A DNA stretch of 64,000 bases from Thalia democratica (lineage: Eukaryota), in contig CBDBBG010000218.1 of the NCBI GenBank assembly GCA_965202585.1, positions 1 through 64,000 of the forward strand, read 5' to 3'. Both the position numbers and the translations under genes were made by a program. This document shows, in pieces, positions 1 through 64,000 of this stretch; the stretch's first letter is position 1, and each line of letters starts with the position of its first letter. The notes under the pieces are model-generated. The model saw nothing but the letters and a program-made list of their open reading frames with translations. It ran no database searches and was not told where the DNA came from.

Positions 1-242
1 TTTGTTCCATGTTCAAGTGAGCTGGGTTAGGGATAACGGTATACAAAAATAAGTATACGCCAGTATATATCTTAATTTAATTAATATTTTTCGGCATTTT
101 AAAACAATTCTGAGATTAAAGTGTTTATGAGTTACTCTTAAAATCAATACACACTTGAAAAGAAATTTGTGCATCAATTAAAAATAAGAACTACAACTAA
201 TCTAAAAAAGTTTAAAATCAAGGAAATTATGTTGGTAAAAAG

Positions 243-314
243 TAATGTAGCGAGGGCTCGAACTCGGGTCCCTGGGTTGAGGGGCGCGAGCACTGAACTC
301 TACACTATTGTTCC
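243..314 (-). mobile_element. tRNA-derived SINE-head or pseudo-tRNA (also 28255-28326, 56225-56296)
   Basis: Minus strand has A-box-like TAGTGTAGAGT and B-box GAGTTCGAGCC, then TTTTT ~15 nt later. No acceptor-stem pairing. Confidence 0.55.
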
Positions 315-2982
315 ACACAAAATGATACGTTTTTAAGATTATATAATTTTGCATGATAATTTAATTGCATATAACTTATTTAGTTCATAATATTATTAAA
401 TTGAACCAAAACATTTTATTCGAGTAAGCACAGTACCAGCTGTGACATATTTCTTCACACAGCTTTCCGCCTTAGCTTTATAAAACTATTGAAATATAAC
501 TTTTAAATTAGCCCCTATAGTTAATAATAATGCCATGGTTATAAAATTTTGTTCAAATCGTTTCTTGCTCAGTGCAAATTGTAGTAATCAAGTAGTTAGT
601 CGCTTGCCGTGTGCTGCAAGTATGACCATCTCTGTTCTATGATAAAGTTGTTAAAAATAAAACCGTCAGACTTATAGCTTAAACATAATTATAGGCTAGA
701 TATGAGGGCGAGTCCGACCTACCCAACAAAAACATCTGGCTAGAAACGTAATAAATAGAAACGCAACTAAAGTTGAGTTTTTTATATCTTTTCAAAGAAG
801 ATGCTATTAACTTTATTTTTAGTACAAAGTTGTGCTTACTTCAATGTTCATTTAAAATTACTTTTGCTTTAAAGATTATTTTTGCTGTCGTCTTCAACAA
901 TTATCGCTTCACGCAGTATAATATCTATATGTTTAGCCCGCCGACCAGAAAAGTTTCTACTTATATTATAGGTCAAAAAAAAAAGTATAGTTGAAGTGAA
1001 ATTTAGAACAAATAAATTAAAAAAAGTACCTTGTTGCGGACCGCAACTTGTGGATTTTTCTGAACATTAGATACTAGTAACAAAGTAAAAGCACAAGGTA
1101 TTGATTAATGCTTAAACGGTTAAAAGTTTAGACCTCCTAACAAATTAATGTTTTTTTTACTATTTTTAAAACTTCCATTTAAAAACAAAAATAAAGTCCA
1201 TTATTTTAAAACTAACATTTTGTGGGTATTAAATCAGATAGGTTATGTTAAATTATTTTATAATACAATTTATGTACTAAAATTTGATATGTACAACATT
1301 TCAATAACTAGAAACGAAAGTCCAAGTTGTAACTTAAGTTGTAACAAGAAATACATCTAATCATTTTTTAAACTAACCTTCAATATTTATCTTTGTCGAA
1401 CACAAAACCTTATCTTTTTTTTTTCTAATTCAATAAATTTTTTAATCTTTTTCAAAAATAAAATTTATTATTGATATTAAATTCGAGTTATATATATTGT
1501 TTATTGAACGATAAGAAAAACCCTTAAAAAATTTTGGTATAAGGATGTGGTGTAGAAAAGAACCTTTCGGTTATCGAGTTGTACACCACAGTATATAAGT
1601 ATTTATATTTTAAACAGTAAAACTATAAAGGAAAAGTCTTTACTTAACTATAAATAAAACTCAGTTTTAAGTTAATATCAGTGGTAGTTATGAGATAAAA
1701 AAAATAGTAAACTTCTATACCCCTGAAAACTTGTTGTATTTAGACATAAGTTTACCGTGAACTTTACTTTTGTTGTATACCTTTAAAAATAGATTAAGTT
1801 AATAATAAATAGATTTTTTTTTGTTCATAACTAGTTAGGAATTTGTTAACTTCTTGTTTCTTGTGGAACTTTTATGTAACTAAATGTAACACAACACACT
1901 TTATAAAAATTATCTGTAAAAAGTTATATCTTAAAAAACAGTCTTTACTGATAGTATAAAACTAATTATAAATAAAAAATACTAAATTTTGTTTTGAGTT
2001 AACTCCTTTTTGTAGTAAAGACTTGATAAAACTTGAAGTTTTATTTAGCTTATAGCCGTAGCATTTAATTTTAGTTGTGTGCATATTTAAAGTCAAAGTT
2101 AATCGTAAACTGGTACCTATCTAGAAATATATAACATTTTATCTAAAATAGGTATTTGTATCGGTTTGTCGTAGAACTAGCAAAAAAAAACTTTTTCCTT
2201 TTAGCTATTTATGTAGTTACAAACTATAAGTTTATTTGAAAAGATTTAGTTGTTTTTCCAAAGCTTTATTAGTTGAAGTAAGTACGGCCCTAAATTAGCA
2301 GTTGGCCCATAGTTTGCTCGCTTCTAGTCTAATTTAAAGTTTTATACTTTGCCTTGTTTTTTTTTAACAACTTTTATAACAGCTTATTTCTAACTTTTAT
2401 TTTATGATGAAAAGTAATTTTTTTTATAAACGGTTTTACCTGTTTAGAAATTAAATTTTGTTAACATTTTGTATCATTAAAAGTTTAAAGCAAAATGTTT
2501 TTCAGAAAACTTTCCTTTATACTTAAATGTAATAAACGTTTGTTTTACTTAATATATCACCTTTACGAACTTATAGAGTAGTACATGTTAATAAAACGTA
2601 GAAAATACCTTTTGTTTAATATACTTAATGAAAGCTTATAGTTAAAAAAAGTTAATGATAGATAAATTGACGATTTCAGCATCTAAATACTTGAATAGCA
2701 TGAAAACGTTTATATGTTCTTTTTTAGTTTCAACAGTATTACGGTTTTGTATTGGTGTATTGTTTTACAACCAGAAGTTTGATGAGAAGCATAATTAAAC
2801 TGTTTCAAGTTTTAAAATGTAACACAGAACTTGTTATTTATCTTATTAAAGGTTTGTAACAATTTTATTTTAATGCCTAGGTCCAGAGTTAGACAATAAA
2901 CTGACAGTAATCAAGCGTTGTTACTTTAAAAAATAAAAATAAAATCTATTCAACGAGTTTATTCAGTAACATCAAAGTATAT

Positions 2983-3035
2983 TTATTGGTAATTGAAGTA
3001 CCTCGGCGGTGTTGGGCGTCTGATTCGGTCTGTCC
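2983..3035 (-). pseudogene. Internally deleted paralog of the CUB terminal exon
   Basis: Aligns to 27240-27398 with deletions of 5, 92 and 9 nt. Acceptor and stop retained. Confidence 0.8.
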
Positions 3036-3871
3036 CTTTGAAAATGTTTATTTGATTGTTTTGAGAATTGAACTTGAAAATTAAAAGAAGCAGAACATTT
3101 TTCAAAATAGAATAAGCCATTGGTTTAGAGTTTGTTTAGCGTTTTTTATCTTTCCAGTTTAAACAAATTCTTTTTTAAACTCATTATAGAATCATTTTGT
3201 GTTAATATATACTGTTTAAACTCCGAATTTATTTCCAAACACTTTAGTAGATAAGAACTTAAAAGTGTGAACTTACAACCAACTCTCCTTTTCCATTAAC
3301 TGAGTTTTACATATTTCTAATTAATAATATTTTGTTGCAAAAATTTTGCTTTGTCGAGTTGCTACAAATAAATTTTTTATTAATTAAAGAAAACTAATGA
3401 AAATCTATGCTTTAACCGTAATGAATCTGGTGTTGGTGTATTAAAACAAACTAAACTTACAAGAGGTTAATATAAACTTTTATAATTAAAATTTTATTTT
3501 TCCACAAATGTATTCATTTATTGATAAAAGCTATTAAAGGTCAACTTCAAAAACCTGCTAGTAGTTTGCTTATGTCAAAAATAATTTTTCAAACACTTTG
3601 TCAATTTATTTCTAATTTTAAATATTAAATAATTTTTTCGTTTGTTCCATGTTCAAGTGAGCTGGGATAAGGGTATACAAAAATAAGTATACGCCAGTAT
3701 ATATCTTAATTTAATTAATATTTTTCTGCATTTTAAAACAATTCTAAGGTAATTCGTGAGTCACTCTTAAAATCAATACACACTTGAATAGAAATTGATG
3801 CATTAATTAAAAATAAGAACTACAACTCATCTAAGAAAGTTTAAAATCAAGGAAATTATGTTGGTAAAAAG

Positions 3872-3943
3872 TAATGCAGCGAGGGCTCGAACTCGGGTCT
3901 CTGGACTGAGGGGCGCGAGCATTGACCTCTACACTATTGTTCC
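3872..3943 (-). mobile_element. tRNA-derived SINE-head or pseudo-tRNA, paralog (also 31884-31955, 59854-59925)
   Basis: A-box TAGTGTAGAGG, B-box GAGTTCGAGCC and a T5 run. Lies inside the older 1.2-kb duplication. Confidence 0.55.
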
Positions 3944-5829
3944 ACATGAAATTATTACGTTTTCGAGATTATATAATTTTGCATGATAATTTAATTGCAT
4001 ATAACTTATTTAGTTCATAATATTATTAAATTGTTTAAAAACTTGTAGCGCTTATGCCTAAAATAAAACAAAAAGTTTGGTAACTATCAATGAGAACCAA
4101 AACATTTTATTGGAGTAAGCACAGTACTATGGATGAATCAAAAAGTAGTATATAAGTACAACATTAAACAAGCTTCGATGCTTTTTATACATTTTAAGAC
4201 AGTTATCTTATTAAACGATGTTACTTCAAGACAATATTTATTCATTAAGTTATAAGTTTATTATTAACTAGTATGATAAATTAAATGTTTAAACTTTGAT
4301 AAACGTAAAGTAATTTTGTTTATATTATTACTTAAAGTAAAACTTAAGCAGATTTTTACAATTTTTTGATTGTCATGTATAACTAGCAAACTTCTTCATT
4401 TTAAAGATAGAATCTAAACAGTTTATTGGAAAGATAAAAAATGATTTAATAGTGTCTTAGTAAAAAAAAAAGAATAAATAACATTAAAATCAAATAATTT
4501 TATTTTTACGTCATTTCGTCAATTAACAACATTTGGGTAAAAGAGTAAATTATATTTAATATTTAATAAAACGGACACTTTACAAATTTACTTACATTAC
4601 AATTTTAATTTAAAGAATAAAAGTAAATTAAACTTATAAACATTAAATTTAAATTTAAAGCTTATAAGAAATAAGGAATTGAAAATAAAATTAAAATAAA
4701 CCTGATTTCTTACTTAAACAATTGTTAAGATTCAATTGTAATTAAACTAAAATAGAGACATAATTAACTTATAGTCTACGCGAAAACAAGACTTATAGGT
4801 GTACTTAAACTTTTATAAATAGACGATATAATTGTAATAGCAGTTACTTTAGTTATTAAATTGTGTCTTGTCATTTGCTACTTAAAGGACATATTATCGT
4901 ACTAAAAACAGTATCTAAAGTCGATTACAAAAGAATAATTATAACAAGTTTGATTACAATAACTATTTAAAACTGTTGAGTCGTTAAACGTTGCTTTTAT
5001 TGTCAAATAAATTCGTGTGGTTGCTTATAAATTTTAAGTAAAACAAATAACACGTAGTATGTCTAATTGAAATTAAATTAAAATAGTGACATGAGCAACT
5101 TTTAACTGACTTTTATAAACAAACAGTCTACAAGATAATTAAATACAAAAAAAAATTTTTATTGCTATTTATGAGACTTAGTATTAAATACAATAAAATA
5201 GTTTAACTACTTGAATTACAATAGATACTGACATACTAAACTACAATGCAAAACTGCTGTGTTACTTATAGAATAATACCAAGGTTGTCTACTATAAAAA
5301 TGCATCATTCATAGTACAACACCAAGGATATATACTATAAAACATCAAGCTTTACTTTTAGTTTAAACCTAACTTTAAAAATAAAATTCTGCTTAGTTTT
5401 GGGCTGTTAATAGAATTAAATACGAAACAGCATTAACTCTCAATAACAAACGCTATTAGTTCAGGTTGAACAAAAATTAAAATAACTTGACAGACATAAG
5501 AAATTATAAGCTATCTAACAATACGATTTATCTAACTTATCTAACAATAATTTCGTTTAGATTGAAACATATATTTTAGTTAATCCAAAAGTTTTATTTA
5601 CTTATAAATAAATAACTATCCTACCTTTATTTTCCAAAACATACAAAATACACTTAAAATATAAATATATATAATTATATTCAGTCTTTACTTATTCGGC
5701 AAGAAATATAACTAAATAGACAAACAAAAAAGCATAATATAACAACAAAATAGACTTATACACAAATAACATTAATTAAAAAGAACACATAGATTTATTT
5801 TTAAGTAAACCTTGAAATAGTTTTACTGA

Positions 5830-8800
5830 AACAACAAAAAACAATGAAGTGTTAACTAAAAATATAAAGCTGGACCTAACTTTAGTTTATTAAAATAGAA
5901 TTAACTTACGAAATAAGAAATTTGAAGCATAATAACAAATTAGACTTATAAATAAACATTAGGACAATTTCATAAGAAACCATACAAACATGTTTTTACA
6001 ATTTAAAAAAGTTCTACAGCAACATCAATGAACTATTTACTAAAATATGATGTAATTTTGTTAAAAGGAAAGAAATAAATCATTAGTAAAATACACATTT
6101 GAACTAATTCCGAGTTTTGTTGAACTTTAACAAATACTTGTCCAATTAAAAACGATCCCATAACATTAGAAAAAACTACATTGAATACAATGAATGCTAC
6201 AACGAAGTAGTTACATTTGGAAAACTCACAAACATATGAAAAGAGAATTAATTTGCCTAATTCCATTGAGTTTTATGTTGGTGATAAGCAGAAGTATAAA
6301 TGATCAGAATCTTTAAGAAAAGATGGGCAATAAATCATAACATAGTATTTAGTTAACTGTTTTAGTTATTGAAACATGTATGAAATATTGAGGCATTGTT
6401 AAACCAAACAGTTTAGATTTCATAAGACTCTAAATGTAGTACCTATTTTCAATGTTTTTCAACTTTATTGAAAAATTTTTTAAAAATACAACTTAGACAA
6501 GACCATTATGTATGAAATACAAAACAATATGGAGTTACCAAAATTACTGTAAACAATAACTAAACGAGACCCCAAAATTAAAATGGTTTTTGAACTGGCC
6601 TTGATTATAATAAAAACATAAGTTAATTTTAAGTTTTTGAATTTAGAGAAACATATAATGTTTGGCGTTAAAGACCTAATAAGTTTTACAGGACTTTAAT
6701 AAGCTTTTATATAGAAAGTATATTCGAGCTGTAATTATTATCTGTAAGTTAAAGTTAAATGTTGTTTTTAGAATAAATCTGGAATTAGTAATATAAACCA
6801 GCGCGACAAGATAATAGTTCATAATAAAATACTAAGAGCAAATTTTAATTTAAAAATCAGTATGTTCTGAAAATAATAGGAGAATAAAACAAAATATATA
6901 GATGTATATATTAGAATGATTAAAGAGAAACCATAGTTAAAGAAAACTTTAGTTAACATCACAGTAAAACGAACGGAAGAATTTTATACCAGCTAAAAAT
7001 ACGAAATTGGATCTAATTTTAGTCTTGTTGAGAATAAGTATATTTATTCACGAATACGACATAAATCATAGTTCAAAGCTCTATGCTAAACCAATATTTT
7101 TTTAAATTGAAATGATTGAATAACGTAAATTTCGACAAAAGTAGGACAAATTTACGAACCAGAGTTGCCATAATACCATTATCAATTGAACGTTATACGC
7201 TTATTAAAATTTGGTTCATTTAAAACTAAAATCTCTAGTGAATAATTTGTAAGGTAAGCAAGTATGTTGCAGACATTTTAAAACTAGATTTAGCGATTCA
7301 GTTGAATTTTATATGGTAATAAACATACTTTTTTAGTAAAACTAGATGTAGAGTAAATAGTCTAAGTAGATAAGGTAGTTACAAGCAGGATTATTTGTAG
7401 TTATGAAGTGAAATTAAAGGAAATTAGTATTAAATCCGTAAACAACTGCTTCACTTAAATTAAGTAAAAACACATCATAGATTTCTAATAACCTAACGTT
7501 TAATTGCATCCAAAATCAAACCAACCAAGTAGTTCTACAGATGATTAATAATTAACAAAAATAAGTGTAATAATTAACATACGAATAACAATGCAATAAC
7601 TAAGAAAATACTAAAACTTGAATGATAAAACATTAATAAAAGCTCTTCATCAATACATCTTGACACTTTAAAGCATATGTTAATGTAGAGAAAACTACCA
7701 CACTTAATGAGACTATATGATGACGTAATAATAGTGTGTAATAAGACCAAATAAATTTCAACTAAAACACCTAAACTATATGGATAAAAAAAGATATTTC
7801 GTTACTTTAATAATGCATACAATTTTATGTGGACAAACAAAGACGTTTATTATGAGAAATTTGAACTTGATTGAAAATTATTGTGCAAAATTACTTGCAC
7901 TTAAAAGAACTAAAACTATTTACAAATATTATTAACTAAAGAGAACCCGTGGAAAAGTTTCCAAATAACCTTGGTATTTAAATTGCAAAGTTATTTTACA
8001 GTAACATGAACAAAACAATGAAGTGTTAACTAAAAATATATCTAAACCATGAGTAAAACAAACTTTATAATATAAAACTCACTTTTAAACCAAAATTTAT
8101 CGAAGTAGAATTAAATCAAGAAAAAATTAAATTTAGAACATAATAACGAATTAGACTTATAAACAAACTTTAGAACAAATTCATGAAAAACCAATTTTTT
8201 TTAAACAAACTTTCAAGTATTCTACAGTAATAATAATGAAACAATCACTAAAACATGATCCGTTTTTGATTGATAAGACTTAGATTGACCCATAAATAAA
8301 TTAAAACTAAATAAATTTACTTCACCGTTTTCTAACCTTTCTTTATATAAAGATTTCAAAAAAGAACTGTAAAAAAAAATATGTTTTAAAAAGTTTAAAT
8401 CAAGTAGACGAGCTTTAGAACATGTAAAACTAAGGAAGTTTTCAAATTAGTTGACAGAAAATAAGACCATAGTATATACAATCTTATACTAAAAAACCAC
8501 CAAAAACAACTAAACAAGTTGAAAAAAACAAAATACGACCTCAAAATTGAAATGTTTACTTAATCGGCACAGTTTTATAACTTCGCCAGTATTTGGTTTA
8601 GAGTTATATATATTAGTGTAAAATAAAGTCATACATAACGATTTAATTTAATACAGACCGTTTATTGTTTAAAACATAAAATTGGAAATAACCATATAAA
8701 GCAGCGCAACAAAATTAGTTATTAAGATTAATTAAGAATAAAATCAAAGATTATATATTAAGAATTGAAAGTAATTATAACATAAATTAATCTTCAGCGC

Positions 8801-11800
8801 GGTAAGGTATTGTTTAAAACTGAATGCATACTTAATTGTTTACTTAAGAAATACTTTTCTATCAAAGTGATTAGTATAAAATAAATAGTTAATGTAGAAA
8901 AATAAGTTAATAAAAGGGCGAATTAGTGATAATTAGCTATTAATTGATTGTTTAATTAGACAATTAAAACCAAACTGATGATCTAAGTTGAAAGATTTAC
9001 ATAGGTAAAATGCCTTTGTTATTTGAAATATGAACAGTGTTATGGCTAAGCAATAAAATACTTATTTTAAATAGATGCGCTTTAAAAAAATACGAACTAG
9101 GGAGATTTAATTCTTTTAAATTACTAAACAGCAAGTTTGTGCTTAGATAAGACATTAGCAAACATAATGTTTGGTAAACACAACCTTGTAGACCAAAAGT
9201 TTGGCTTAAATGGCACAACATAAATTACAGCTGAAAAACAAAACCTTTAAACTTATAAAGCCTCTAAGTGTATTTCAACTGTAATTATTACTTGAAAGAA
9301 ACAGTTTAATTTTTTAAATTCAAAGATAAATATATGTTGTTTGTGACATAAAACTAGAAATAATCATATAAACCAGCACAAAATGATAAAAATTAATGAT
9401 TAAGTATTAAGAATTTATTGTAATTTTGATACTAGTTTAATTAAATACGCAGCAATTAAATAAAAAAAAGAGTTAATTGCCACATACATATGTGTTATTT
9501 AATTAAGAGGCACCTTATCCAATATTTTTTATGATGCTATGATTACATTACTTTATCGATACTTCTTACGTAATTAAGGCAGAATACACAACTTACCTTA
9601 AAAAAATCTACCAAAACTAACCTTTTAAAACGACTTGAAAGTTCAATAAAAGATAAGAATAATAGTAGTAGACTAAATAAAGAAATAGTAGAAACGAGCT
9701 AGTTGGGCTACATAAAGCCCAAGCGTAAACTACAGTTTTAAGACAAGTGTACCCTTGTGTTTACATAGATTAAATCAGTAAGAAAATATAAAATCTTTCA
9801 ATTAAATGTAGACGCATTACAAACATACGAATTTGAGGATACTAAATGCTTTTAAGCAAAAATATAATTTTGACAAGACAAGTAAGTATAATATGCTCAT
9901 TCTTGTATACAAAAAAAAAACTTTGCTTAATCGTACTACAAAAACTATTCTTAAAAAATTATAAACAAGACCTCAAAAATAAAACAGTTACTTAATTGGC
10001 GTAACTGTGTTCAGTTAGAAAACAATTATTTGAAGCTGGTCAATTCGCCATTTTTAGTTTAGGTAGAGACAGTTTTATAATGTAAACATATACAAGGTTG
10101 TCACATATCGAGTTGAAAAAAATTTACGGATTTTTGGATTTAATTCAAAAATACATAAACAATGACTTGAAATTATGTGAAATTTTTAATCTTAGTTTTT
10201 TATAAGTTTTAACAACAGTTTATGATTCAATCATATAAGTTTTCCATTGCACTATTTGAATCATATGTATATTATTAATGTATACGCAATAAAAAGCTCT
10301 ACAAGCAAAATACTTGTATCTTTACCACATAATAAATACACACATGAGGTCATAGAAGATTTTAATTTGTTCCAAAAATTCAACTAAACCTTGAAAAAAA
10401 ATGAAGTGCAATTTTTTTTGGAAGTAACATTCTCAAAATGCAGTTTATAGTGATGATAAGCTTTCATATTAACAGCATGTTTATATCAAATTTCATGACA
10501 TTTTTAAAAACCCCTACTTTTTCCTGATTTTGTGGTACCATGTATATAACGGTTAAGTGTAGTACAGACCGTGAAACTATACTTTTTAAAACGGGATGGT
10601 AACTTTAAATAGACATTTTATCTCATTGAATTTCGAGTGAAATAAATATTTTTTAATGCAATAGATATAACAGTTAAAACAAGCGCAACAAGATGATAAT
10701 CAATGATAAAACCATAAGAGTTGGTTTTAGTTTGAATATTTGTTTAACTTAAGTTTAGTAAGGGAGTGTACAAAATTATATGAACAAAACTGTTTAATTA
10801 AGAAACACTGCTCTATCAAATTAAAATAGTAGGAAAACAAACAATAACGATTGTTTAATATCAAAATTAATTTCATCAAATCAAGACTTATGATCAGGGT
10901 TGCAACAGGATTTCTTCTAGATTTTCAAATTACACGTTTATTGGTCTATTTTTAATTAAAAGTTAAGTTTAACGTAAAAAAACTGTGTTAAACAGTAAAA
11001 CAACATTACTGTGAAGCTACTTTAAATGTATTTTAAAATAAATAATTATAGATGACAAAAAGTATTTATACATTTGATAGATTGTTCGCGTCGAATCAAA
11101 ATTTTACTACTTAACATGTAAAAATTGTTTAAAATTCAAGGTTTTTTCAAAATTTCACAAGTTCCAGGTTTTTCGGCAACCCGGCATGATCTAAATTTTA
11201 CAATAAACATAAAAAGTAGTTATTAGTATCAATAAAGTATTGTGAACTTTTTACAATATAGATCACAATAAAAGTTTTTGACTAAATAATAAGGAGAACA
11301 ATCAATTCAATATCATAAATTTTGTTAATAAAATAATGTTTCACTCGTTTGAACTAAGTCAAACGAGACCAGGCAATAAAACATTACTAGTTGGTTACCA
11401 TATATGCTTAAATACAAGAAATTTATTAAAAAATATGTTATTCATTGCTTATTATGCATATGTAAGTGGTAGCAAGCATCCCTGCAATCATAAACAACCA
11501 ATAAATAAGAAACATGGCAACTACAACAGACGAAAACACAAAAAAAAAATTAAAGCAAGTTGTTTAAATGAACTAACACTTTAGAATATACACAAGGTTG
11601 ATCAACGGAATCTAGGAAGTTTGAAGTACAAGTAAACAAAGTTTGTCTGTTAGATCTAATTAAAGGATGAGTAAGAAGTTATACATAAAAATAAACTAGT
11701 AAATCTTGATGTTATTCATCCATTATTAGAAAGTTATTTGCTTTAAAAGATAGTTTATAAATATAACTTGCGTGCATATTACATAAGAAGCAAAACCCTA

Positions 11801-12045
11801 ATAAATTATTAAAAAAAGAGACTTATTATGACGTAACAATACGGTAAAATAAAAATAAAATTTAAGGACTTAATGTGAAAAAATAGCTGAAAAAGAAAAG
11901 TTCGTATAATTGATGCAGATTATTTTTTAAATTTCCTACCTTTATGTGGACAAATTAAGAAGAAATTATTTTATTTACTATTGTACGATTAACGCAAATA
12001 ATTTGTAAATTTACCTAATTTTGTGTGGACAAATTAAGACGTAAA
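5830..12045 (+). repeat. Cryptic, highly diverged same-strand repeat cluster (possibly a decayed gene or TE array)
   Basis: Perfect 29-mer at 5838-5866 and 8012-8040. Recurrent motifs ac(g/a)(a)gacc(c/t)caaaa at ~6563/8535/9963, a(c/g)cagc(g/a)c(a/g)ac at ~6797/8700/9372/10680, and t(a/g)tgtggacaaa at ~7826/11943/12022. Confidence 0.7.
10895..11184. mobile_element. Probable decayed hAT-type MITE
   Basis: Termini CAGGGTTGC...GCAACCCGG (8/9 inverted match). Subterminal ttcaagg/ttccagg motifs. Flanks cttatgat / catgat resemble an eroded TSD. Confidence 0.5.
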
Positions 12046-12239
12046 TAGTTTGCAGAAAACAAGTGGCTCATATTAATTTATATCTGTTAATTAATTTAAA
12101 TACTAAAATTAGTCTGTTCTATCTAATAACTTCTAGTGAAAATAAAGTTTAGTTGTGACTTAGAAGTACTAGCACATTTACTCGTACATCCAAGTCATAA
12201 CTCAAGGAGGTGCCGACCAGCATAGTGGCCGGGCCTAAA

Positions 12240-12344
12240 GGACAAGAATTAAAAAAAAACTAAGGGCAGGCCGGGGAGATGACAGGTGCGAAGCACCGTG
12301 TCATCGACCGGCCGTAGCCCTTTGTTTTTTTTTAATTCTTGTCC
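12240..12344. repeat. 105-nt imperfect inverted repeat (long hairpin)
   Basis: GGACAAGAATT-A9-C pairs with G-T9-AATTCTTGTCC (21 bp perfect). Further stems: AAGGGC/GCCCTT, GGCCGG/CCGGCC, GATGACA/TGTCATC, GGTGC/GCACC, closed by a GAA loop. Confidence 0.95.
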
Positions 12345-12499
12345 GCTACCTATAAACTTACTAATCAAACTCACCAATATAAAACCACTCAGTCAATAAC
12401 TAAAAAACTATCAACCGATATTACCGTCAGGCCTTTAATGGTTATACACTGATAAGTTAGATCACATAAGCTCAAGGTTAGTAAAAGATAACAGATAAA

Positions 12500-23438: not shown

Positions 23439-23481
23439 AAACTAAGAAAACAGTAGATTTGTCTTTTTTTTGATGTTAGAA

Positions 23482-23487
23482 AATAAA
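23482..23487 (+). promoter_or_regulatory. Candidate polyadenylation signal of UTP14 (also 51452-51457)
   Basis: AATAAA ~45 nt after the TAA stop, followed by T-rich sequence. Confidence 0.45.
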
Positions 23488-54400: not shown

Positions 54401-54939
54401 TATACCACTGAACATTAAACTTTTAAGTTAAAAATTTATATATGCAACAAAAGTTTAAACAAATTACACAAGGGAAAGTTGAAAAAAGTTCAAGTGAGTA
54501 TCATTAAGTTGAACTAGCATAACTGTAAGTATACTCTAATTTCAACTTTAAACTTAAATTATCGGAAATTTTAAAATTAAAGTTGATTAAAGGTAAAGTT
54601 TTAAATTTGGAACTAAAAACAGAGCTGTGCTAAAGTTTCAAGCTTTTCCAGATTGATTTTGAATCGTAAAACTATCCAACTTTAGTTTTCAAGTGCATCT
54701 AATCTGTTTTTCTCCGTACCACACTAACTTTAAATTATTCATAAACAATATTAAACATGATATTAAAGCATATAAAAAACTTTTTTGTTTAAATTATTTG
54801 AAGCAAGGAGGTTAACAATATTTTAAACCACGGTTTACGCAGCTTATTCGTATAAAACACCAGAAAATATAACTTGTTTTCTTTTTTTAATTAGACAATG
54901 AACTTTACCGCAAGATCAACAACAACAGCATCCGAGACA

Positions 54940-54984
54940 ATCCTACGACCAGTTTCGTCCTTATTAGGACTCATCAGATGACCG
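54940..54984 (-). ncRNA. Minimal type I hammerhead ribozyme motif, unit 2
   Basis: Identical to 26970-27014. Confidence 0.8.
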
Positions 54985-55209
54985 AAATAAATATTGGCTT
55001 TTTTAATTAGGAAACGGTACAAAGTTGTAGTACTGAAACATGATAGTACAGCATATTTTTGATCAAAACCCGAAAACTACTCCAAAAAAAAATAATAATG
55101 GTGAAGGAATTTTTATTTATCATATAAAAACATTATAGATTTACTTAGAATAAATACAAATACAAATATTATACATTAAACGAGTTTATTCAGTAACATC
55201 AAAGTATGT

Positions 55210-55368
55210 TTATTGGTAATCGAAGTAGAATCCCTTGGCGGTGTTGGCGCTGTCAGATCTGAACACGATGTACATCCAGTTACCGGTCGCTTCAATGTGG
55301 TACCTCTGGTTGTAGTTGTCGAAAATGTTGGCCAGTTGGGCGTCAGATTCGGTTTGTCCGTCGTACAC
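55210..55368 (-). CDS. Terminal exon of a CUB-domain protein, copy in unit 2
   Basis: Identical to 27240-27398 (offset 27970). Confidence 0.85.
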   Translation of the reverse strand: MYDGQTESDAQLANIFDNYNQRYHIEATGNWMYIVFRSDSANTAKGFYFDYQ

Positions 55369-55982
55369 CTTTGAAAACGTTTATTTGATTTTTTTAATCT
55401 CTAAAATACTTGGACGTTAAAAAAAGTAGAAAATTTTTCAAAATAGAATAAGCCATTGCTTTAGAGTTTATTTATCGTTTTTAATCTTTCCAGTTTAAAC
55501 AAATTCTTATTTAAACTCATTATAGAATCCTTTTGTGTTAATATATACTGTTTTAACTCCGAATTTATTTCCAAACACTTTTGTAAATAAGAACTTAAAA
55601 GTGTGAACTTACAACCAGCTCTCCTTTTCCGTTAACTGAGTTTTACATATTTCCTATTATATTTAATATTTTGTTGCAAAAATTTTGCTTTGTCGAGTTG
55701 CTACAAGTAATTTTTATATTAATTAAAGAAAACTAATGTAAATGCTATGCTTTAACCGTAATGAATCTGGTGTTGGTGTATTAAAATAAACTAAACTTAC
55801 AAGAGGTTAATATAAACTTTTATAATTAAAATTTTATTTTTCCACAAAATTGTATTCATTTATTGATAAAAGATATCAAAGGTCAGCTTCACAAACCTGC
55901 TAGTAGTTTGTTTATGTCAAAAATAATTTTTCAAACACTTTGTCATTTTATTTCTAATTTTAAATATTTAATAATTGTTTTG

Positions 55983-58900
55983 TTTGTTCCATGTTCAAGT
56001 GAGCTGGGTTAGGGATAACGGTATACAAAAATAAGTATACGCCAGTATATATCTTAATTTAATTAATATTTTTCGGCATTTTAAAACAATTCTGAGATTA
56101 AAGTGTTTATGAGTTACTCTTAAAATCAATACACACTTGAAAAGAAATTTGTGCATCAATTAAAAATAAGAACTACAACTAATCTAAAAAAGTTTAAAAT
56201 CAAGGAAATTATGTTGGTAAAAAGTAATGTAGCGAGGGCTCGAACTCGGGTCCCTGGGTTGAGGGGCGCGAGCACTGAACTCTACACTATTGTTCCACAC
56301 AAAATGATACGTTTTTAAGATTATATAATTTTGCATGATAATTTAATTGCATATAACTTATTTAGTTCATAATATTATTAAATTGAACCAAAACATTTTA
56401 TTCGAGTAAGCACAGTACCAGCTGTGACATATTTCTTCACACAGCTTTCCGCCTTAGCTTTATAAAACTATTGAAATATAACTTTTAAATTAGCCCCTAT
56501 AGTTAATAATAATGCCATGGTTATAAAATTTTGTTCAAATCGTTTCTTGCTCAGTGCAAATTGTAGTAATCAAGTAGTTAGTCGCTTGCCGTGTGCTGCA
56601 AGTATGACCATCTCTGTTCTATGATAAAGTTGTTAAAAATAAAACCGTCAGACTTATAGCTTAAACATAATTATAGGCTAGATATGAGGGCGAGTCCGAC
56701 CTACCCAACAAAAACATCTGGCTAGAAACGTAATAAATAGAAACGCAACTAAAGTTGAGTTTTTTATATCTTTTCAAAGAAGATGCTATTAACTTTATTT
56801 TTAGTACAAAGTTGTGCTTACTTCAATGTTCATTTAAAATTACTTTTGCTTTAAAGATTATTTTTGCTGTCGTCTTCAACAATTATCGCTTCACGCAGTA
56901 TAATATCTATATGTTTAGCCCGCCGACCAGAAAAGTTTCTACTTATATTATAGGTCAAAAAAAAAAGTATAGTTGAAGTGAAATTTAGAACAAATAAATT
57001 AAAAAAAGTACCTTGTTGCGGACCGCAACTTGTGGATTTTTCTGAACATTAGATACTAGTAACAAAGTAAAAGCACAAGGTATTGATTAATGCTTAAACG
57101 GTTAAAAGTTTAGACCTCCTAACAAATTAATGTTTTTTTTACTATTTTTAAAACTTCCATTTAAAAACAAAAATAAAGTCCATTATTTTAAAACTAACAT
57201 TTTGTGGGTATTAAATCAGATAGGTTATGTTAAATTATTTTATAATACAATTTATGTACTAAAATTTGATATGTACAACATTTCAATAACTAGAAACGAA
57301 AGTCCAAGTTGTAACTTAAGTTGTAACAAGAAATACATCTAATCATTTTTTAAACTAACCTTCAATATTTATCTTTGTCGAACACAAAACCTTATCTTTT
57401 TTTTTTCTAATTCAATAAATTTTTTAATCTTTTTCAAAAATAAAATTTATTATTGATATTAAATTCGAGTTATATATATTGTTTATTGAACGATAAGAAA
57501 AACCCTTAAAAAATTTTGGTATAAGGATGTGGTGTAGAAAAGAACCTTTCGGTTATCGAGTTGTACACCACAGTATATAAGTATTTATATTTTAAACAGT
57601 AAAACTATAAAGGAAAAGTCTTTACTTAACTATAAATAAAACTCAGTTTTAAGTTAATATCAGTGGTAGTTATGAGATAAAAAAAATAGTAAACTTCTAT
57701 ACCCCTGAAAACTTGTTGTATTTAGACATAAGTTTACCGTGAACTTTACTTTTGTTGTATACCTTTAAAAATAGATTAAGTTAATAATAAATAGATTTTT
57801 TTTTGTTCATAACTAGTTAGGAATTTGTTAACTTCTTGTTTCTTGTGGAACTTTTATGTAACTAAATGTAACACAACACACTTTATAAAAATTATCTGTA
57901 AAAAGTTATATCTTAAAAAACAGTCTTTACTGATAGTATAAAACTAATTATAAATAAAAAATACTAAATTTTGTTTTGAGTTAACTCCTTTTTGTAGTAA
58001 AGACTTGATAAAACTTGAAGTTTTATTTAGCTTATAGCCGTAGCATTTAATTTTAGTTGTGTGCATATTTAAAGTCAAAGTTAATCGTAAACTGGTACCT
58101 ATCTAGAAATATATAACATTTTATCTAAAATAGGTATTTGTATCGGTTTGTCGTAGAACTAGCAAAAAAAAACTTTTTCCTTTTAGCTATTTATGTAGTT
58201 ACAAACTATAAGTTTATTTGAAAAGATTTAGTTGTTTTTCCAAAGCTTTATTAGTTGAAGTAAGTACGGCCCTAAATTAGCAGTTGGCCCATAGTTTGCT
58301 CGCTTCTAGTCTAATTTAAAGTTTTATACTTTGCCTTGTTTTTTTTTAACAACTTTTATAACAGCTTATTTCTAACTTTTATTTTATGATGAAAAGTAAT
58401 TTTTTTTATAAACGGTTTTACCTGTTTAGAAATTAAATTTTGTTAACATTTTGTATCATTAAAAGTTTAAAGCAAAATGTTTTTCAGAAAACTTTCCTTT
58501 ATACTTAAATGTAATAAACGTTTGTTTTACTTAATATATCACCTTTACGAACTTATAGAGTAGTACATGTTAATAAAACGTAGAAAATACCTTTTGTTTA
58601 ATATACTTAATGAAAGCTTATAGTTAAAAAAAGTTAATGATAGATAAATTGACGATTTCAGCATCTAAATACTTGAATAGCATGAAAACGTTTATATGTT
58701 CTTTTTTAGTTTCAACAGTATTACGGTTTTGTATTGGTGTATTGTTTTACAACCAGAAGTTTGATGAGAAGCATAATTAAACTGTTTCAAGTTTTAAAAT
58801 GTAACACAGAACTTGTTATTTATCTTATTAAAGGTTTGTAACAATTTTATTTTAATGCCTAGGTCCAGAGTTAGACAATAAACTGACAGTAATCAAGCGT

Positions 58901-61900
58901 TGTTACTTTAAAAAATAAAAATAAAATCTATTCAACGAGTTTATTCAGTAACATCAAAGTATATTTATTGGTAATTGAAGTACCTCGGCGGTGTTGGGCG
59001 TCTGATTCGGTCTGTCCCTTTGAAAATGTTTATTTGATTGTTTTGAGAATTGAACTTGAAAATTAAAAGAAGCAGAACATTTTTCAAAATAGAATAAGCC
59101 ATTGGTTTAGAGTTTGTTTAGCGTTTTTTATCTTTCCAGTTTAAACAAATTCTTTTTTAAACTCATTATAGAATCATTTTGTGTTAATATATACTGTTTA
59201 AACTCCGAATTTATTTCCAAACACTTTAGTAGATAAGAACTTAAAAGTGTGAACTTACAACCAACTCTCCTTTTCCATTAACTGAGTTTTACATATTTCT
59301 AATTAATAATATTTTGTTGCAAAAATTTTGCTTTGTCGAGTTGCTACAAATAAATTTTTTATTAATTAAAGAAAACTAATGAAAATCTATGCTTTAACCG
59401 TAATGAATCTGGTGTTGGTGTATTAAAACAAACTAAACTTACAAGAGGTTAATATAAACTTTTATAATTAAAATTTTATTTTTCCACAAATGTATTCATT
59501 TATTGATAAAAGCTATTAAAGGTCAACTTCAAAAACCTGCTAGTAGTTTGCTTATGTCAAAAATAATTTTTCAAACACTTTGTCAATTTATTTCTAATTT
59601 TAAATATTAAATAATTTTTTCGTTTGTTCCATGTTCAAGTGAGCTGGGATAAGGGTATACAAAAATAAGTATACGCCAGTATATATCTTAATTTAATTAA
59701 TATTTTTCTGCATTTTAAAACAATTCTAAGGTAATTCGTGAGTCACTCTTAAAATCAATACACACTTGAATAGAAATTGATGCATTAATTAAAAATAAGA
59801 ACTACAACTCATCTAAGAAAGTTTAAAATCAAGGAAATTATGTTGGTAAAAAGTAATGCAGCGAGGGCTCGAACTCGGGTCTCTGGACTGAGGGGCGCGA
59901 GCATTGACCTCTACACTATTGTTCCACATGAAATTATTACGTTTTCGAGATTATATAATTTTGCATGATAATTTAATTGCATATAACTTATTTAGTTCAT
60001 AATATTATTAAATTGTTTAAAAACTTGTAGCGCTTATGCCTAAAATAAAACAAAAAGTTTGGTAACTATCAATGAGAACCAAAACATTTTATTGGAGTAA
60101 GCACAGTACTATGGATGAATCAAAAAGTAGTATATAAGTACAACATTAAACAAGCTTCGATGCTTTTTATACATTTTAAGACAGTTATCTTATTAAACGA
60201 TGTTACTTCAAGACAATATTTATTCATTAAGTTATAAGTTTATTATTAACTAGTATGATAAATTAAATGTTTAAACTTTGATAAACGTAAAGTAATTTTG
60301 TTTATATTATTACTTAAAGTAAAACTTAAGCAGATTTTTACAATTTTTTGATTGTCATGTATAACTAGCAAACTTCTTCATTTTAAAGATAGAATCTAAA
60401 CAGTTTATTGGAAAGATAAAAAATGATTTAATAGTGTCTTAGTAAAAAAAAAAGAATAAATAACATTAAAATCAAATAATTTTATTTTTACGTCATTTCG
60501 TCAATTAACAACATTTGGGTAAAAGAGTAAATTATATTTAATATTTAATAAAACGGACACTTTACAAATTTACTTACATTACAATTTTAATTTAAAGAAT
60601 AAAAGTAAATTAAACTTATAAACATTAAATTTAAATTTAAAGCTTATAAGAAATAAGGAATTGAAAATAAAATTAAAATAAACCTGATTTCTTACTTAAA
60701 CAATTGTTAAGATTCAATTGTAATTAAACTAAAATAGAGACATAATTAACTTATAGTCTACGCGAAAACAAGACTTATAGGTGTACTTAAACTTTTATAA
60801 ATAGACGATATAATTGTAATAGCAGTTACTTTAGTTATTAAATTGTGTCTTGTCATTTGCTACTTAAAGGACATATTATCGTACTAAAAACAGTATCTAA
60901 AGTCGATTACAAAAGAATAATTATAACAAGTTTGATTACAATAACTATTTAAAACTGTTGAGTCGTTAAACGTTGCTTTTATTGTCAAATAAATTCGTGT
61001 GGTTGCTTATAAATTTTAAGTAAAACAAATAACACGTAGTATGTCTAATTGAAATTAAATTAAAATAGTGACATGAGCAACTTTTAACTGACTTTTATAA
61101 ACAAACAGTCTACAAGATAATTAAATACAAAAAAAAATTTTTATTGCTATTTATGAGACTTAGTATTAAATACAATAAAATAGTTTAACTACTTGAATTA
61201 CAATAGATACTGACATACTAAACTACAATGCAAAACTGCTGTGTTACTTATAGAATAATACCAAGGTTGTCTACTATAAAAATGCATCATTCATAGTACA
61301 ACACCAAGGATATATACTATAAAACATCAAGCTTTACTTTTAGTTTAAACCTAACTTTAAAAATAAAATTCTGCTTAGTTTTGGGCTGTTAATAGAATTA
61401 AATACGAAACAGCATTAACTCTCAATAACAAACGCTATTAGTTCAGGTTGAACAAAAATTAAAATAACTTGACAGACATAAGAAATTATAAGCTATCTAA
61501 CAATACGATTTATCTAACTTATCTAACAATAATTTCGTTTAGATTGAAACATATATTTTAGTTAATCCAAAAGTTTTATTTACTTATAAATAAATAACTA
61601 TCCTACCTTTATTTTCCAAAACATACAAAATACACTTAAAATATAAATATATATAATTATATTCAGTCTTTACTTATTCGGCAAGAAATATAACTAAATA
61701 GACAAACAAAAAAGCATAATATAACAACAAAATAGACTTATACACAAATAACATTAATTAAAAAGAACACATAGATTTATTTTTAAGTAAACCTTGAAAT
61801 AGTTTTACTGAAACAACAAAAAACAATGAAGTGTTAACTAAAAATATAAAGCTGGACCTAACTTTAGTTTATTAAAATAGAATTAACTTACGAAATAAGA

Positions 61901-64000
61901 AATTTGAAGCATAATAACAAATTAGACTTATAAATAAACATTAGGACAATTTCATAAGAAACCATACAAACATGTTTTTACAATTTAAAAAAGTTCTACA
62001 GCAACATCAATGAACTATTTACTAAAATATGATGTAATTTTGTTAAAAGGAAAGAAATAAATCATTAGTAAAATACACATTTGAACTAATTCCGAGTTTT
62101 GTTGAACTTTAACAAATACTTGTCCAATTAAAAACGATCCCATAACATTAGAAAAAACTACATTGAATACAATGAATGCTACAACGAAGTAGTTACATTT
62201 GGAAAACTCACAAACATATGAAAAGAGAATTAATTTGCCTAATTCCATTGAGTTTTATGTTGGTGATAAGCAGAAGTATAAATGATCAGAATCTTTAAGA
62301 AAAGATGGGCAATAAATCATAACATAGTATTTAGTTAACTGTTTTAGTTATTGAAACATGTATGAAATATTGAGGCATTGTTAAACCAAACAGTTTAGAT
62401 TTCATAAGACTCTAAATGTAGTACCTATTTTCAATGTTTTTCAACTTTATTGAAAAATTTTTTAAAAATACAACTTAGACAAGACCATTATGTATGAAAT
62501 ACAAAACAATATGGAGTTACCAAAATTACTGTAAACAATAACTAAACGAGACCCCAAAATTAAAATGGTTTTTGAACTGGCCTTGATTATAATAAAAACA
62601 TAAGTTAATTTTAAGTTTTTGAATTTAGAGAAACATATAATGTTTGGCGTTAAAGACCTAATAAGTTTTACAGGACTTTAATAAGCTTTTATATAGAAAG
62701 TATATTCGAGCTGTAATTATTATCTGTAAGTTAAAGTTAAATGTTGTTTTTAGAATAAATCTGGAATTAGTAATATAAACCAGCGCGACAAGATAATAGT
62801 TCATAATAAAATACTAAGAGCAAATTTTAATTTAAAAATCAGTATGTTCTGAAAATAATAGGAGAATAAAACAAAATATATAGATGTATATATTAGAATG
62901 ATTAAAGAGAAACCATAGTTAAAGAAAACTTTAGTTAACATCACAGTAAAACGAACGGAAGAATTTTATACCAGCTAAAAATACGAAATTGGATCTAATT
63001 TTAGTCTTGTTGAGAATAAGTATATTTATTCACGAATACGACATAAATCATAGTTCAAAGCTCTATGCTAAACCAATATTTTTTTAAATTGAAATGATTG
63101 AATAACGTAAATTTCGACAAAAGTAGGACAAATTTACGAACCAGAGTTGCCATAATACCATTATCAATTGAACGTTATACGCTTATTAAAATTTGGTTCA
63201 TTTAAAACTAAAATCTCTAGTGAATAATTTGTAAGGTAAGCAAGTATGTTGCAGACATTTTAAAACTAGATTTAGCGATTCAGTTGAATTTTATATGGTA
63301 ATAAACATACTTTTTTAGTAAAACTAGATGTAGAGTAAATAGTCTAAGTAGATAAGGTAGTTACAAGCAGGATTATTTGTAGTTATGAAGTGAAATTAAA
63401 GGAAATTAGTATTAAATCCGTAAACAACTGCTTCACTTAAATTAAGTAAAAACACATCATAGATTTCTAATAACCTAACGTTTAATTGCATCCAAAATCA
63501 AACCAACCAAGTAGTTCTACAGATGATTAATAATTAACAAAAATAAGTGTAATAATTAACATACGAATAACAATGCAATAACTAAGAAAATACTAAAACT
63601 TGAATGATAAAACATTAATAAAAGCTCTTCATCAATACATCTTGACACTTTAAAGCATATGTTAATGTAGAGAAAACTACCACACTTAATGAGACTATAT
63701 GATGACGTAATAATAGTGTGTAATAAGACCAAATAAATTTCAACTAAAACACCTAAACTATATGGATAAAAAAAGATATTTCGTTACTTTAATAATGCAT
63801 ACAATTTTATGTGGACAAACAAAGACGTTTATTATGAGAAATTTGAACTTGATTGAAAATTATTGTGCAAAATTACTTGCACTTAAAAGAACTAAAACTA
63901 TTTACAAATATTATTAACTAAAGAGAACCCGTGGAAAAGTTTCCAAATAACCTTGGTATTTAAATTGCAAAGTTATTTTACAGTAACATGAACAAAACAA
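55983..64000 (+). repeat. ~28-kb tandem repeat unit, copy 3 (partial, cut by window end)
   Basis: Matches 1-8018 at offset 55982 and retains the 45-bp segment (60598-60642). Confidence 0.99.
58965..59017 (-). pseudogene. Deleted CUB exon paralog, unit 3
   Basis: Identical to 2983-3035. Confidence 0.8.

What the first reader, a model, noticed from the sequence alone, without database searches (positions are those of the whole stretch)
1..64000. Near-perfect ~28-kb tandem amplification carrying the normally single-copy ribosome-biogenesis gene UTP14
Seen: at least 2.3 head-to-tail copies, nearly identical over tens of kb, each full copy with an intact UTP14 frame. Known: UTP14 is generally single-copy, the well-known exceptions being mammalian retrocopies (UTP14C/Utp14b). 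Inference: a very recent amplification (unequal crossover, or rolling-circle/eccDNA reintegration) raising SSU-processome gene dosage, or an assembly artefact from concatenated haplotypes.
Basis: partly seen in the sequence, partly recalled or inferred. Interest (0 to 1): 0.7.

Follow-up and report, generated by a model that had tools for sequence, protein, structure and literature searches.

The report
Real ten-copy tandem array of UTP14
This marine animal really carries about ten near-identical head-to-tail copies of a 28,000-letter block holding the ribosome-building gene UTP14, set inside an older row of four more working copies, so a gene that is usually single here exists only as a gene array.

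Summary
The window holds 2.29 head-to-tail copies of a unit of 27,967-28,012 bp, 99.85-100% identical.

The window is the start of a 74-kb unplaced contig made only of this array. The array belongs in a 100-N gap on chromosome C1 at 26.474 Mb. Both gap flanks are the same unit.

It is not a false duplication. In contig data of the best-holding sample, stretches specific to the young unit have depth about 450. Stretches specific to the neighbouring diverged copy have depth about 46, so there are roughly 10 copies. The assembly resolves at least 8.

The young array (X) sits inside an older UTP14 array, alpha-beta-gamma-[X]n-zeta:
- The older copies differ by 11-18% in introns.
- All copies have open 12-exon GT-AG frames.
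- dN/dS is 0.04-0.09.
- Probes with three exons found no intact UTP14 elsewhere in the genome.

One subtype of the young unit is a zeta/X recombinant. Its switch point lies inside a conserved exon, which points to unequal crossing-over.

An unexpected extra: a 12.4-kb non-coding element of the unit recurs in a second perfect 27.8-kb array that carries a prenyltransferase-beta gene.

A first-reader note on another piece of this genome (s1-311444) had already flagged a UTP14 tandem array.

The parts
1..28012 (+). Tandem unit copy 1 (subtype A)
   Evidence: Self-BLAST and variant table. 100% identical to copy 3 and to the chromosomal copy 'delta' on C1.
28013..55982 (+). Tandem unit copy 2 (subtype B, 27,970 bp)
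   Evidence: 99.85% identical to copy 1. The differences lie in the patch 45341-46961, a 45-nt deletion after unit 4615 and one substitution.
55983..64000 (+). Tandem unit copy 3 (subtype A), cut by the window end. It continues to contig position 74,373 (unit position 18,391).
16698..23438 (+). UTP14 gene, copy 1. Exons: 16698-16812, 18867-19109 (ATG at 18875), 19485-19572, 19760-19946, 20278-20415, 20662-20748, 20952-21093, 21342-21580, 21807-21924, 22146-22315, 22562-22651, 22883-23018, 23299-23438 (stop TAA). The first (ATG) exon was not located.
   Evidence: Collinear Pfam PF04615 hits. Top PDB matches are Utp14/UTP14A. GT-AG model is open in all six paralogue versions. The upstream exon shows 8 synonymous and 1 non-synonymous difference against alpha.
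44665..51408 (+). UTP14 gene, copy 2. Exons: 44665-44779, 46837-47079, 47455-47542, 47730-47916, 48248-48385, 48632-48718, 48922-49063, 49312-49550, 49777-49894, 50116-50285, 50532-50621, 50853-50988, 51269-51408.
   Evidence: Differs from copy 1 by 4 exon substitutions, 2 of them amino-acid changes.
17374..18991 (.). The A/B patch, the only region where young units differ systematically (about 2%). Subtype B is identical here to the flanking older copy zeta.
18991..19069 (.). Recombination switch interval inside the conserved exon 18867-19109. B units are zeta-like to its left and X-like to its right.
4105..16462 (.). 'S-core', a 12.4-kb non-coding, repeat-derived block directly upstream of the UTP14 exons. 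The copy 2 equivalent is 32117-44429.
   Evidence: Collinear at 75-85% with the unit of the C60 array. Conserved equally in all six frames, with stops. Many copies share the right end at unit 16462.
27243..27410 (-). Terminal exon encoding the second half of a CUB domain, convergent with UTP14. The copy 2 equivalent is 55213-55380. A degenerate duplicate lies at 2949-3047.
   Evidence: Pfam CUB PF00431, profile positions 60-110 of 110, E=3e-4. ORF lists.
3035..4033 (+). 1-kb internal direct repeat. Its partner is 27398-28415 (91.6% identical), which spans the arbitrary unit boundary.

Best explanation
The window is part of a real chromosomal tandem array on the minus strand of chromosome C1 at about 26.43-26.56 Mb.

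An older array of UTP14-bearing units of about 28-29 kb (alpha, beta, gamma, X, zeta) arose by successive tandem duplications. All of its genes have been kept functional by purifying selection.

Very recently one unit (X) expanded to about 9-10 near-identical copies. The mechanism was unequal crossing-over or gene conversion between misaligned neighbouring units (non-allelic homologous recombination). The same process made beta and gamma near-identical.

The assembler could not close the young array. It left a 100-N gap on C1 and three unplaced array-only contigs: C227 (the window), C536 and C559.

The effect is about 13-14 UTP14 genes per haploid genome that encode nearly identical proteins. 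That raises the template number for one factor of the small-subunit processome.

Shown: the structure, the copy number, the selection on the coding sequence and the recombinant units. Inferred: that dosage is the selected benefit, and that all copies are transcribed.
For: Structure
- Period and identity.
- C227 (74,373 bp), C536 (45,618 bp) and C559 (44,493 bp) consist only of the unit.
- On C1 the order is gamma gene, then X copy 'delta' (100% identical over 19,615 bp), then a 100-N gap at 26474074-26474173, then 'epsilon', then zeta. Zeta's upstream 19 kb is X-identical and its gene body is 8-16% diverged.

Copy number (table 8)
- In run X1, exact contigs specific to zeta have depth 45.7 and 46.4. 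Contigs shared with the young unit have depth 394-547. X-type gene contigs have depth 454-469.
- In run X2 the figures are 40.9 against 338-459.
- The high-depth contigs carry the X letters at 23 of 23 diagnostic sites, against 11 of 23 for gamma.
- The variant table distinguishes at least 8 different young copies in the assembly.

Genes
- 12-exon GT-AG frames are open in XA, XB, gamma, beta, zeta and alpha.
- dN/dS is 0.04-0.09. dS of 0.11-0.18 equals the intron divergence of 0.11-0.18.
- The C-terminal exon has 9 open copies, exon 3 has 11, and the upstream exon has 13. All lie in the array.

Mechanism
- B units equal zeta at 1259 of 1259 sites of the patch, and equal X from 19069 onward. 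The switch lies inside a conserved exon.
- Young copies differ otherwise by only about 5 private events in about 210 kb.
Against: - No read spanning two or more units could be examined. Only contig data of older runs were served, and no raw reads.
- The depth argument uses per-contig mean word depth. The tool itself warns that this is no copy number. It rests on two runs of one sample, which may be the sample that was assembled.
- The single-copy baseline is two or three short zeta-specific contigs, not genome-wide coverage.
- No RNA data exist, so expression of any copy is unshown.
- The first exon is missing from the model.
- The extra copies could in principle be episomal rather than in the gap.
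Confidence: 0.78

Rival explanations
1. Assembly artefact. The true locus has one or two units, and the contigs are concatenated or duplicated haplotypes.
For: - C227, C536 and C559 are short, unplaced, array-only contigs.
- The A-B-A order in C227 could look like alternating alleles.
- Copies are almost too identical.
Against: - X-specific contigs have about 10x the depth of zeta-specific ones in two runs.
- At least 8 copies are distinguishable by private variants.
- The chromosome itself contains unit-to-unit junctions on both sides of a gap.
- Older diverged units with the same period flank it.
Confidence: 0.04
2. Extrachromosomal or rolling-circle origin. A 28-kb circle excised by recombination between neighbouring units is amplified. 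It either persists as episomal multimers or has been re-integrated at the locus.
For: - The array has one more copy of the intergenic block than of the X gene body. That is the architecture expected after excision and re-integration through the repeated block.
- The copies are extremely uniform.
- About 2 of the roughly 10 copies are not in the assembly.
Against: - Contigs mix subtypes (A-B-A, B-B), with further private variants. This is not what one rolling circle would produce.
- Both gap flanks on C1 are X units, so a chromosomal home exists.
- Unequal crossing-over gives the same architecture without extra assumptions.
Confidence: 0.08
3. Element-driven amplification. The 12.4-kb S-core element directly upstream of UTP14 acts in cis, as a mobile or recombination/replication-promoting element. 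It generates tandem amplicons of about 28 kb made of itself plus the adjacent gene. UTP14 is then cargo, not the target of selection.
For: - A collinear 12.4-kb homologue (75-85%) sits in a second perfect array, C60. That array has 5 units at a spacing of 27,842 bp, and adjacent copies are 100% identical over the 1,159 nt compared. It carries a prenyltransferase-beta gene.
- In both arrays the gene lies 0.25-1.5 kb beyond the same end of the element, in the same orientation.
- Pieces of the element lie in further arrays with periods of 5.5, 22.2 and 25.7 kb.
Against: - The element belongs to a repeat family with hundreds of candidate copies (335-605 first-look candidates).
- By earlier unchecked notes this genome is full of tandem arrays, so co-occurrence may be chance.
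- No ORF, terminal inverted repeat or Helitron-type end was seen.
- The array periods differ.
- The recombinant B units are explained by ordinary homologous recombination.
Confidence: 0.1
4. Neutral or passenger copy-number polymorphism. The young expansion is a private, selectively neutral structural variant of the sequenced individual, with no dosage role.
For: - The young copies are almost mutation-free, so the event is very recent.
- A run labelled as another organism (X3) shows similar depth on both sides of the boundary, with no 10x step.
Against: - Five older lineages have been kept intact at dN/dS 0.04-0.09 over dS 0.11-0.18. This argues that multiple UTP14 copies are useful or at least tolerated in the long term.
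- The identity of X3 and how its contigs map are uncertain.
Confidence: 0.3

Closest known systems
Ampliconic or tandem segmental-duplication gene arrays shaped by non-allelic homologous recombination and concerted evolution (dosage arrays such as histone, 5S or amylase-type copy-number arrays)
   Same: - Head-to-tail units in one orientation.
- A near-identical core with more diverged edge copies.
- Recombinant units whose switch points lie in homologous sequence.
- Gene copies kept intact.
- An assembly gap at the array.
   Different: - The unit is large (28 kb) and mostly non-coding.
- The cargo is an SSU-processome factor for which I found no report of tandem arrays.
- The array holds the whole UTP14 complement of the genome.
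Mammalian UTP14 retrocopies (Utp14b, UTP14C)
   Same: An extra UTP14 gene copy beside the parental gene. UTP14c is described as a retrogene in PMC5408686.
   Different: Those copies are intronless, dispersed and RNA-mediated. Here every copy keeps at least 12 GT-AG introns and lies in tandem, so the copies are DNA-mediated.
Other large-unit tandem arrays of normally single-copy genes noted by this scan in the same genome (Islet with units of about 26 kb, s1-301158; POC1 halves, s1-306614), and the prenyltransferase-beta array on C60 found here
   Same: - Units of 16-28 kb.
- Same-strand arrays.
- Selectively maintained copies.
- The C60 array shares the 12.4-kb S-core and the near-perfect identity between units.
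   Different: - The Islet units are strongly diverged.
- The POC1 units carry half-genes.
- The earlier notes are unchecked AI notes.

Membership tests
UTP14 (Pfam PF04615, U3 snoRNA-associated protein 14) | Collinear match along the Utp14 profile | tested here: met
   Six exon pieces hit PF04615 in order, at profile positions 55-126, 165-220, 220-271, 271-300, 583-641 and 671-722. Three pieces exceed the 30.2-bit cut-off on their own.
UTP14 (Pfam PF04615, U3 snoRNA-associated protein 14) | Conserved KIKSK-type basic helix and the C-terminal 'PGWG.W.G' segment, aligned with Utp14 of solved SSU processomes | tested here: met
   The top PDB sequence hits of two exons are Utp14 (5oql_K, 5wlc_SS, 6ke6_RQ) and human UTP14A (7mq8_SS), at the expected positions. 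Single-exon E-values are weak, 0.09-0.15.
UTP14 (Pfam PF04615, U3 snoRNA-associated protein 14) | Complete open reading frame from start to stop | tested here: inconclusive
   630 codons are open over 13 exons. The upstream exon 16698-16812 has no ATG and is clearly coding. The first exon was not found.
UTP14 (Pfam PF04615, U3 snoRNA-associated protein 14) | Expression, and a role in 18S rRNA processing | not testable with these tools
   No RNA run holds the stretch.
Tandem segmental amplification by unequal crossing-over (NAHR) | Head-to-tail units with constant period and the same orientation | tested here: met
Tandem segmental amplification by unequal crossing-over (NAHR) | Sequencing depth proportional to the claimed copy number | tested here: met
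   About 450 against about 46 in run X1, and about 390 against 41 in run X2 (table 8). Diagnostic letters confirm the X type at 23 of 23 sites. These are contig word depths of one sample, not raw reads.
Tandem segmental amplification by unequal crossing-over (NAHR) | Recombinant units with a switch point inside sequence shared by the paralogues | tested here: met
   B units are zeta-identical up to 18991 and X-identical from 19069. The switch lies inside exon 18867-19109.
Tandem segmental amplification by unequal crossing-over (NAHR) | Single molecules spanning two or more units and the array edges | not testable with these tools
   Only contigs of older runs are available. The assembly contigs themselves span up to 2.66 units.
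False duplication / haplotig artefact | Summed depth over the copies equals single-copy level | tested here: not met
   Depth of the young unit is about 10x that of the adjacent unique sequence.
Retrocopy (UTP14C/Utp14b type) | Intronless, dispersed copy with a poly(A) remnant | tested here: not met
   All copies keep at least 12 introns with GT-AG borders and lie in tandem.

The most novel reading that the evidence does not exclude
The 12.4-kb non-coding S-core block is a cis-acting, possibly mobile 'amplifier'. Wherever it lands just upstream of a gene, it promotes formation of near-perfect tandem amplicons of about 28 kb, made of itself plus that gene. This would explain why two unrelated housekeeping genes sit at the same end of the element, in the same orientation, in two independent young arrays of almost the same period. 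The genes are UTP14 on C1 and GGTase-I/prenyltransferase beta on C60 and C6. The periods are 28,012 and 27,842 bp.
Probability: 0.1. Interest if true: 0.8.

Novelty: new member of a known kind. Interest (0 to 1): 0.45.

Why it matters
UTP14 is a core factor of the small-subunit processome. It is single-copy in most animals apart from mammalian retrocopies.

Here the gene exists only as a tandem family of about 13-14 members. It has an old, selectively maintained layer and a very young layer of about 10 copies. That makes it a natural case for three questions:
- Can the dosage of a single ribosome-biogenesis factor be limiting?
- How fast do arrays expand by unequal crossing-over?
- How do such arrays distort assemblies? 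This one leaves a gap and three orphan contigs.

The shared 12-kb block with a second perfect array hints that some large amplifications in this genome may not be independent accidents.

Tried and rejected
- **Rfam at gathering thresholds and ARAGORN** found nothing in the window. The unit is therefore not an rDNA or tRNA array, despite the GC-skewed 18-24 kb segment.
- **A whole-genome search with the Pfam family PF04615** returned nothing, even in the control genomes.
- **A 14-kb DNA query** was swamped by common repeats, with only 1 candidate scored.
- **An automatic GC-based exon-chaining script** gave a wrong 3' end and spurious mini-exons. It was corrected by hand with the paralogue alignment. 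An alternative reading 'AIITNKRK' from acceptor 22831 was rejected because 2- and 4-nt indels in the paralogues break it.
- **The first (ATG) exon** was not found, either in the 235 nt between S-core and exon 16698 or by comparison with alpha.
- **The GC-rich island 12.1-12.85 kb** is not coding.
- **S-core** shows no protein-coding signature in tblastx against two diverged copies. It has no terminal inverted repeats or Helitron-like end.
- **Raw reads and RNA runs** were not available. Spanning reads, true depth profiles and expression could therefore not be examined.
The alpha-beta and beta-gamma intergenic blocks, the C6:60.71 Mb paralogue and the C4/C6 arrays were mapped only by coordinates.
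- **The organism** was not identified here. 'Pelagic tunicate' comes only from earlier unchecked notes.
Full report
**1. The observation**

The window (GC 27%, no N) has one dominant self-match offset of 27,967-28,015 bp. Self-BLAST resolves three copies:
- Copy 1 is 1-28012.
- Copy 2 is 28013-55982, 99.85% identical to copy 1 (36 mismatches, 7 gaps).
- Copy 3 starts at 55983 and is 100% identical to copy 1.

Rfam at gathering thresholds and ARAGORN find nothing, so this is not an rDNA or tRNA array. The repeat is real and far beyond chance.

**2. Where the window sits**

The window is positions 1-64000 of contig C227 of an 802-Mb, 1,833-contig assembly.
- C227 is only 74,373 bp long and consists of 2.66 units and nothing else.
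- Two more unplaced contigs, C536 (45,618 bp) and C559 (44,493 bp), are 1.6 units each.

The same unit lies on the minus strand of the 116.9-Mb chromosome C1. In unit orientation the order on C1 is:
- An older UTP14 copy 'gamma'. Its gene body is 90-93% identical to the unit, and its 3' flank is 98-99%.
- Copy 'delta', unit positions 1-19615, 100% identical to window copy 1.
- A 100-N gap at C1:26474074-26474173.
- Copy 'epsilon', unit positions 9716-28012.
- Copy 'zeta'. Its first 19 kb are identical to the young unit, and its UTP14 gene body is 8-16% diverged. Homology stops at unit position 23988.

Further upstream lie 'beta' and 'alpha' at a spacing of about 29.3 kb. The unplaced contigs are therefore pieces of an array that the scaffolder could not close.

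**3. Real copies or false duplication?**

Only contig data of older public runs were available, and no raw reads. I laid four runs on a 6-kb stretch of C1 (L021) that crosses the boundary between sequence shared with the young unit and zeta-specific sequence.

Run X1, individual contigs:
- Exact zeta-specific contigs have word depth 45.7 and 46.4.
- Contigs on the shared part have 394-547.
- Contigs that map onto the zeta gene at about 95% have 454-469.

Run X2 (same sample): 40.9 against 338-459.

The high-depth contigs carry the young-unit letter at 23 of 23 diagnostic sites. Gamma matches only 11 of 23 and alpha only 9 of 23. This gives about 10 young copies per zeta copy.

Independently, private variants distinguish at least 8 different young copies in the assembly.

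Caveats:
- The tool warns that contig depth is no copy number.
- The runs come from one sample, perhaps the one that was assembled.
- The baseline is a few short contigs.
- A run labelled as another organism (X3) shows no such depth step. This hints that the burst is lineage- or individual-specific, but it is weak evidence.

**4. The gene**

No unspliced ORF reaches 120 aa. Stop-free pieces on the + strand hit Pfam Utp14 (PF04615) collinearly. Their best PDB sequence matches are Utp14 of yeast and Chaetomium and human UTP14A.

With the help of a five-paralogue alignment I built a 12-exon GT-AG model, from ATG 18875 to the stop at 23436-23438, 589 codons. An additional upstream exon lies at 16698-16812. 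Its 9 differences from alpha are 8 synonymous and 1 non-synonymous, so it is coding. It joins exon 18867 in frame but lacks an ATG. The true first exon remains unfound.

The model is open in both window copies and in gamma, beta, zeta and alpha. Splice sites are canonical except at the variable acidic exon 6/7 border in three older copies.

**5. Selection and age**

Between lineages, dN/dS is 0.04-0.09. dS (0.11-0.18) equals the intron divergence (0.11-0.18). The older copies are therefore ordinary, long-retained functional paralogues, not pseudogenes and not products of exon-limited conversion.

Beta and gamma differ by 1 site in 4,771, so they are a second recent duplication.

Outside one patch, the young copies differ by about five private events in about 210 kb. 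The burst is thus orders of magnitude younger than the split from gamma.

Whole-genome six-frame searches place every copy in this array:
- The C-terminal exon has 9 copies.
- Exon 3 has 11 copies.
- The upstream exon has 13 copies.

The only exception is a frameshifted relic at C1:98.064-98.072 Mb. There is no separate 'housekeeping' UTP14.

**6. Mechanism**

Young units come in two subtypes that differ only in unit positions 17374-18991.
- Subtype A: C227 copies 1 and 3, and delta.
- Subtype B: all other young copies.

In this patch B is identical to zeta at 1259 of 1259 sites. From 19069 onward B is identical to A and differs from zeta. The switch lies within 78 nt of the conserved exon 18867-19109.

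B units are thus zeta/X recombinants. This is the expected product of unequal crossing-over or gene conversion between misaligned neighbouring units.

The array has one more copy of the 19.8-kb intergenic block than of the X gene body, with graded identity at the gamma edge. This also fits concerted evolution by homologous recombination.

Excision and re-integration of a circle would give the same architecture and cannot be excluded. The mixed A-B-A and B-B orders, however, argue against a single rolling circle.

**7. What else is in the unit**

Apart from UTP14, the only clear coding piece is a terminal CUB half-domain exon on the minus strand, at 27243-27410. A degenerate duplicate lies at 2949-3047.

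Most of the rest is repeat-derived. Unit positions 4105-16462 ('S-core') have no ORFs, and all six frames are conserved equally against diverged copies.

This 12.4-kb block is collinear at 75-85% with part of the unit of another array on the unplaced contig C60 (125 kb).
- That array has five units at a spacing of exactly 27,842 bp.
- Adjacent copies are 100% identical over the 1,159 nt I could compare.
- The rest of its unit carries a three-exon prenyltransferase-beta gene. Pfam PF00432 is covered at positions 1-304, with E-values from 1e-19 to 3e-46.

In both arrays the gene starts 0.25-1.5 kb beyond the same end of the block, in the same orientation. S-core pieces also occur in arrays with periods of 5.5, 22.2 and 25.7 kb.

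A closer paralogue of the whole intergenic block, without UTP14, lies at C6:60.71-60.73 Mb.

The block belongs to a family with hundreds of candidate copies, and earlier unchecked notes describe many tandem arrays in this genome. Chance co-occurrence is therefore the default. A causal role is my low-probability novel reading.

**8. Comparison with what is known**

This works like a classical ampliconic tandem array maintained by non-allelic homologous recombination. It passes the tests I could run for that class.

It is not like the mammalian UTP14 retrocopies, which are intronless (PMC5408686).

A full-text search for UTP14 together with 'tandem duplication' returned six papers. By title and abstract, none describes a UTP14 tandem array.

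A first-reader note on another piece of this genome (s1-311444) had already flagged a UTP14 tandem array. It had no follow-up.

**9. Verdict**

- The artefact reading is rejected.
- The 'recent amplification by unequal crossing-over' reading is supported, and extended to an older, selected, multi-lineage UTP14 array.
- Novelty: a new member of a known kind.
- Interest is moderate. The case is clean and unusual for this gene. However, tandem amplification is a known process and appears common in this genome, and expression and benefit are untested.

Noticed in passing
Contig C60 (G000:C60:1-125204); loci L026, L027, L028, L024 = C60:93000-122000: A second near-perfect tandem array, with five units at a spacing of exactly 27,842 bp. 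Each unit has a three-exon prenyltransferase-beta (GGTase-I-beta-like) gene on the minus strand (C60:112952-115987) and a 12.4-kb homologue of the UTP14 unit's S-core. An older copy of the exon, split over two frames, lies at C6:70294331-70294895.
   Followed up: partly
window 4105-16462 (and 32117-44429): S-core is a 12.4-kb non-coding block with a sharply shared right end at unit 16462. It has hundreds of candidate copies, many of them inside other tandem arrays: C4:84.44 Mb (period 5,522), C6:77.12-77.19 Mb (period 22,248) and C127 (about 25.7 kb). Its nature is unknown: a large non-autonomous element, or a nest of repeats.
   Followed up: partly
G000:C6:60713654-60733095: A paralogue (86-94% identical) of the whole non-UTP14 part of the unit, from the CUB-exon region through S-core up to 75 nt before UTP14 exon 16698. 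It has no UTP14 exons. It may be the source or a derivative of the intergenic block.
   Followed up: no
G000:C1:98064370-98065247 and 98072070-98072178: A decayed UTP14 relic on the same chromosome, 71 Mb away. It has 71% DNA identity to exons 3-5 with their introns, and a frameshifted copy of the upstream exon. It may be an ancestral or old dispersed locus.
   Followed up: no
window 26905-27008: A dispersed repeat of about 100 nt with many 93-99% identical copies on most chromosomes, often in inverted pairs 230-330 nt apart. Rfam at gathering threshold reported no ribozyme in the window.
   Followed up: partly
window 16970-18370 (intron upstream of exon 18867): Contig word depths of 50,000-240,000 fall on this stretch in three runs (table 2). 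This means very high-copy repeats inside the UTP14 intron that also holds the A/B patch. Beta and gamma differ by 4.4% here although they are identical in the gene body.
   Followed up: no
window 12240-12344: A GC-rich hairpin of about 105 nt. It matches itself on the opposite strand at 82% in the genome search. It lies in a GC-rich island at 12.1-12.85 kb that shows no coding signal.
   Followed up: no
window 4616-4660 vs 32628: Copy 2 lacks 45 nt between two 'AATTTAAAG' direct repeats. This is a replication-slippage deletion, and it accounts for most of the length difference between the units.
   Followed up: yes
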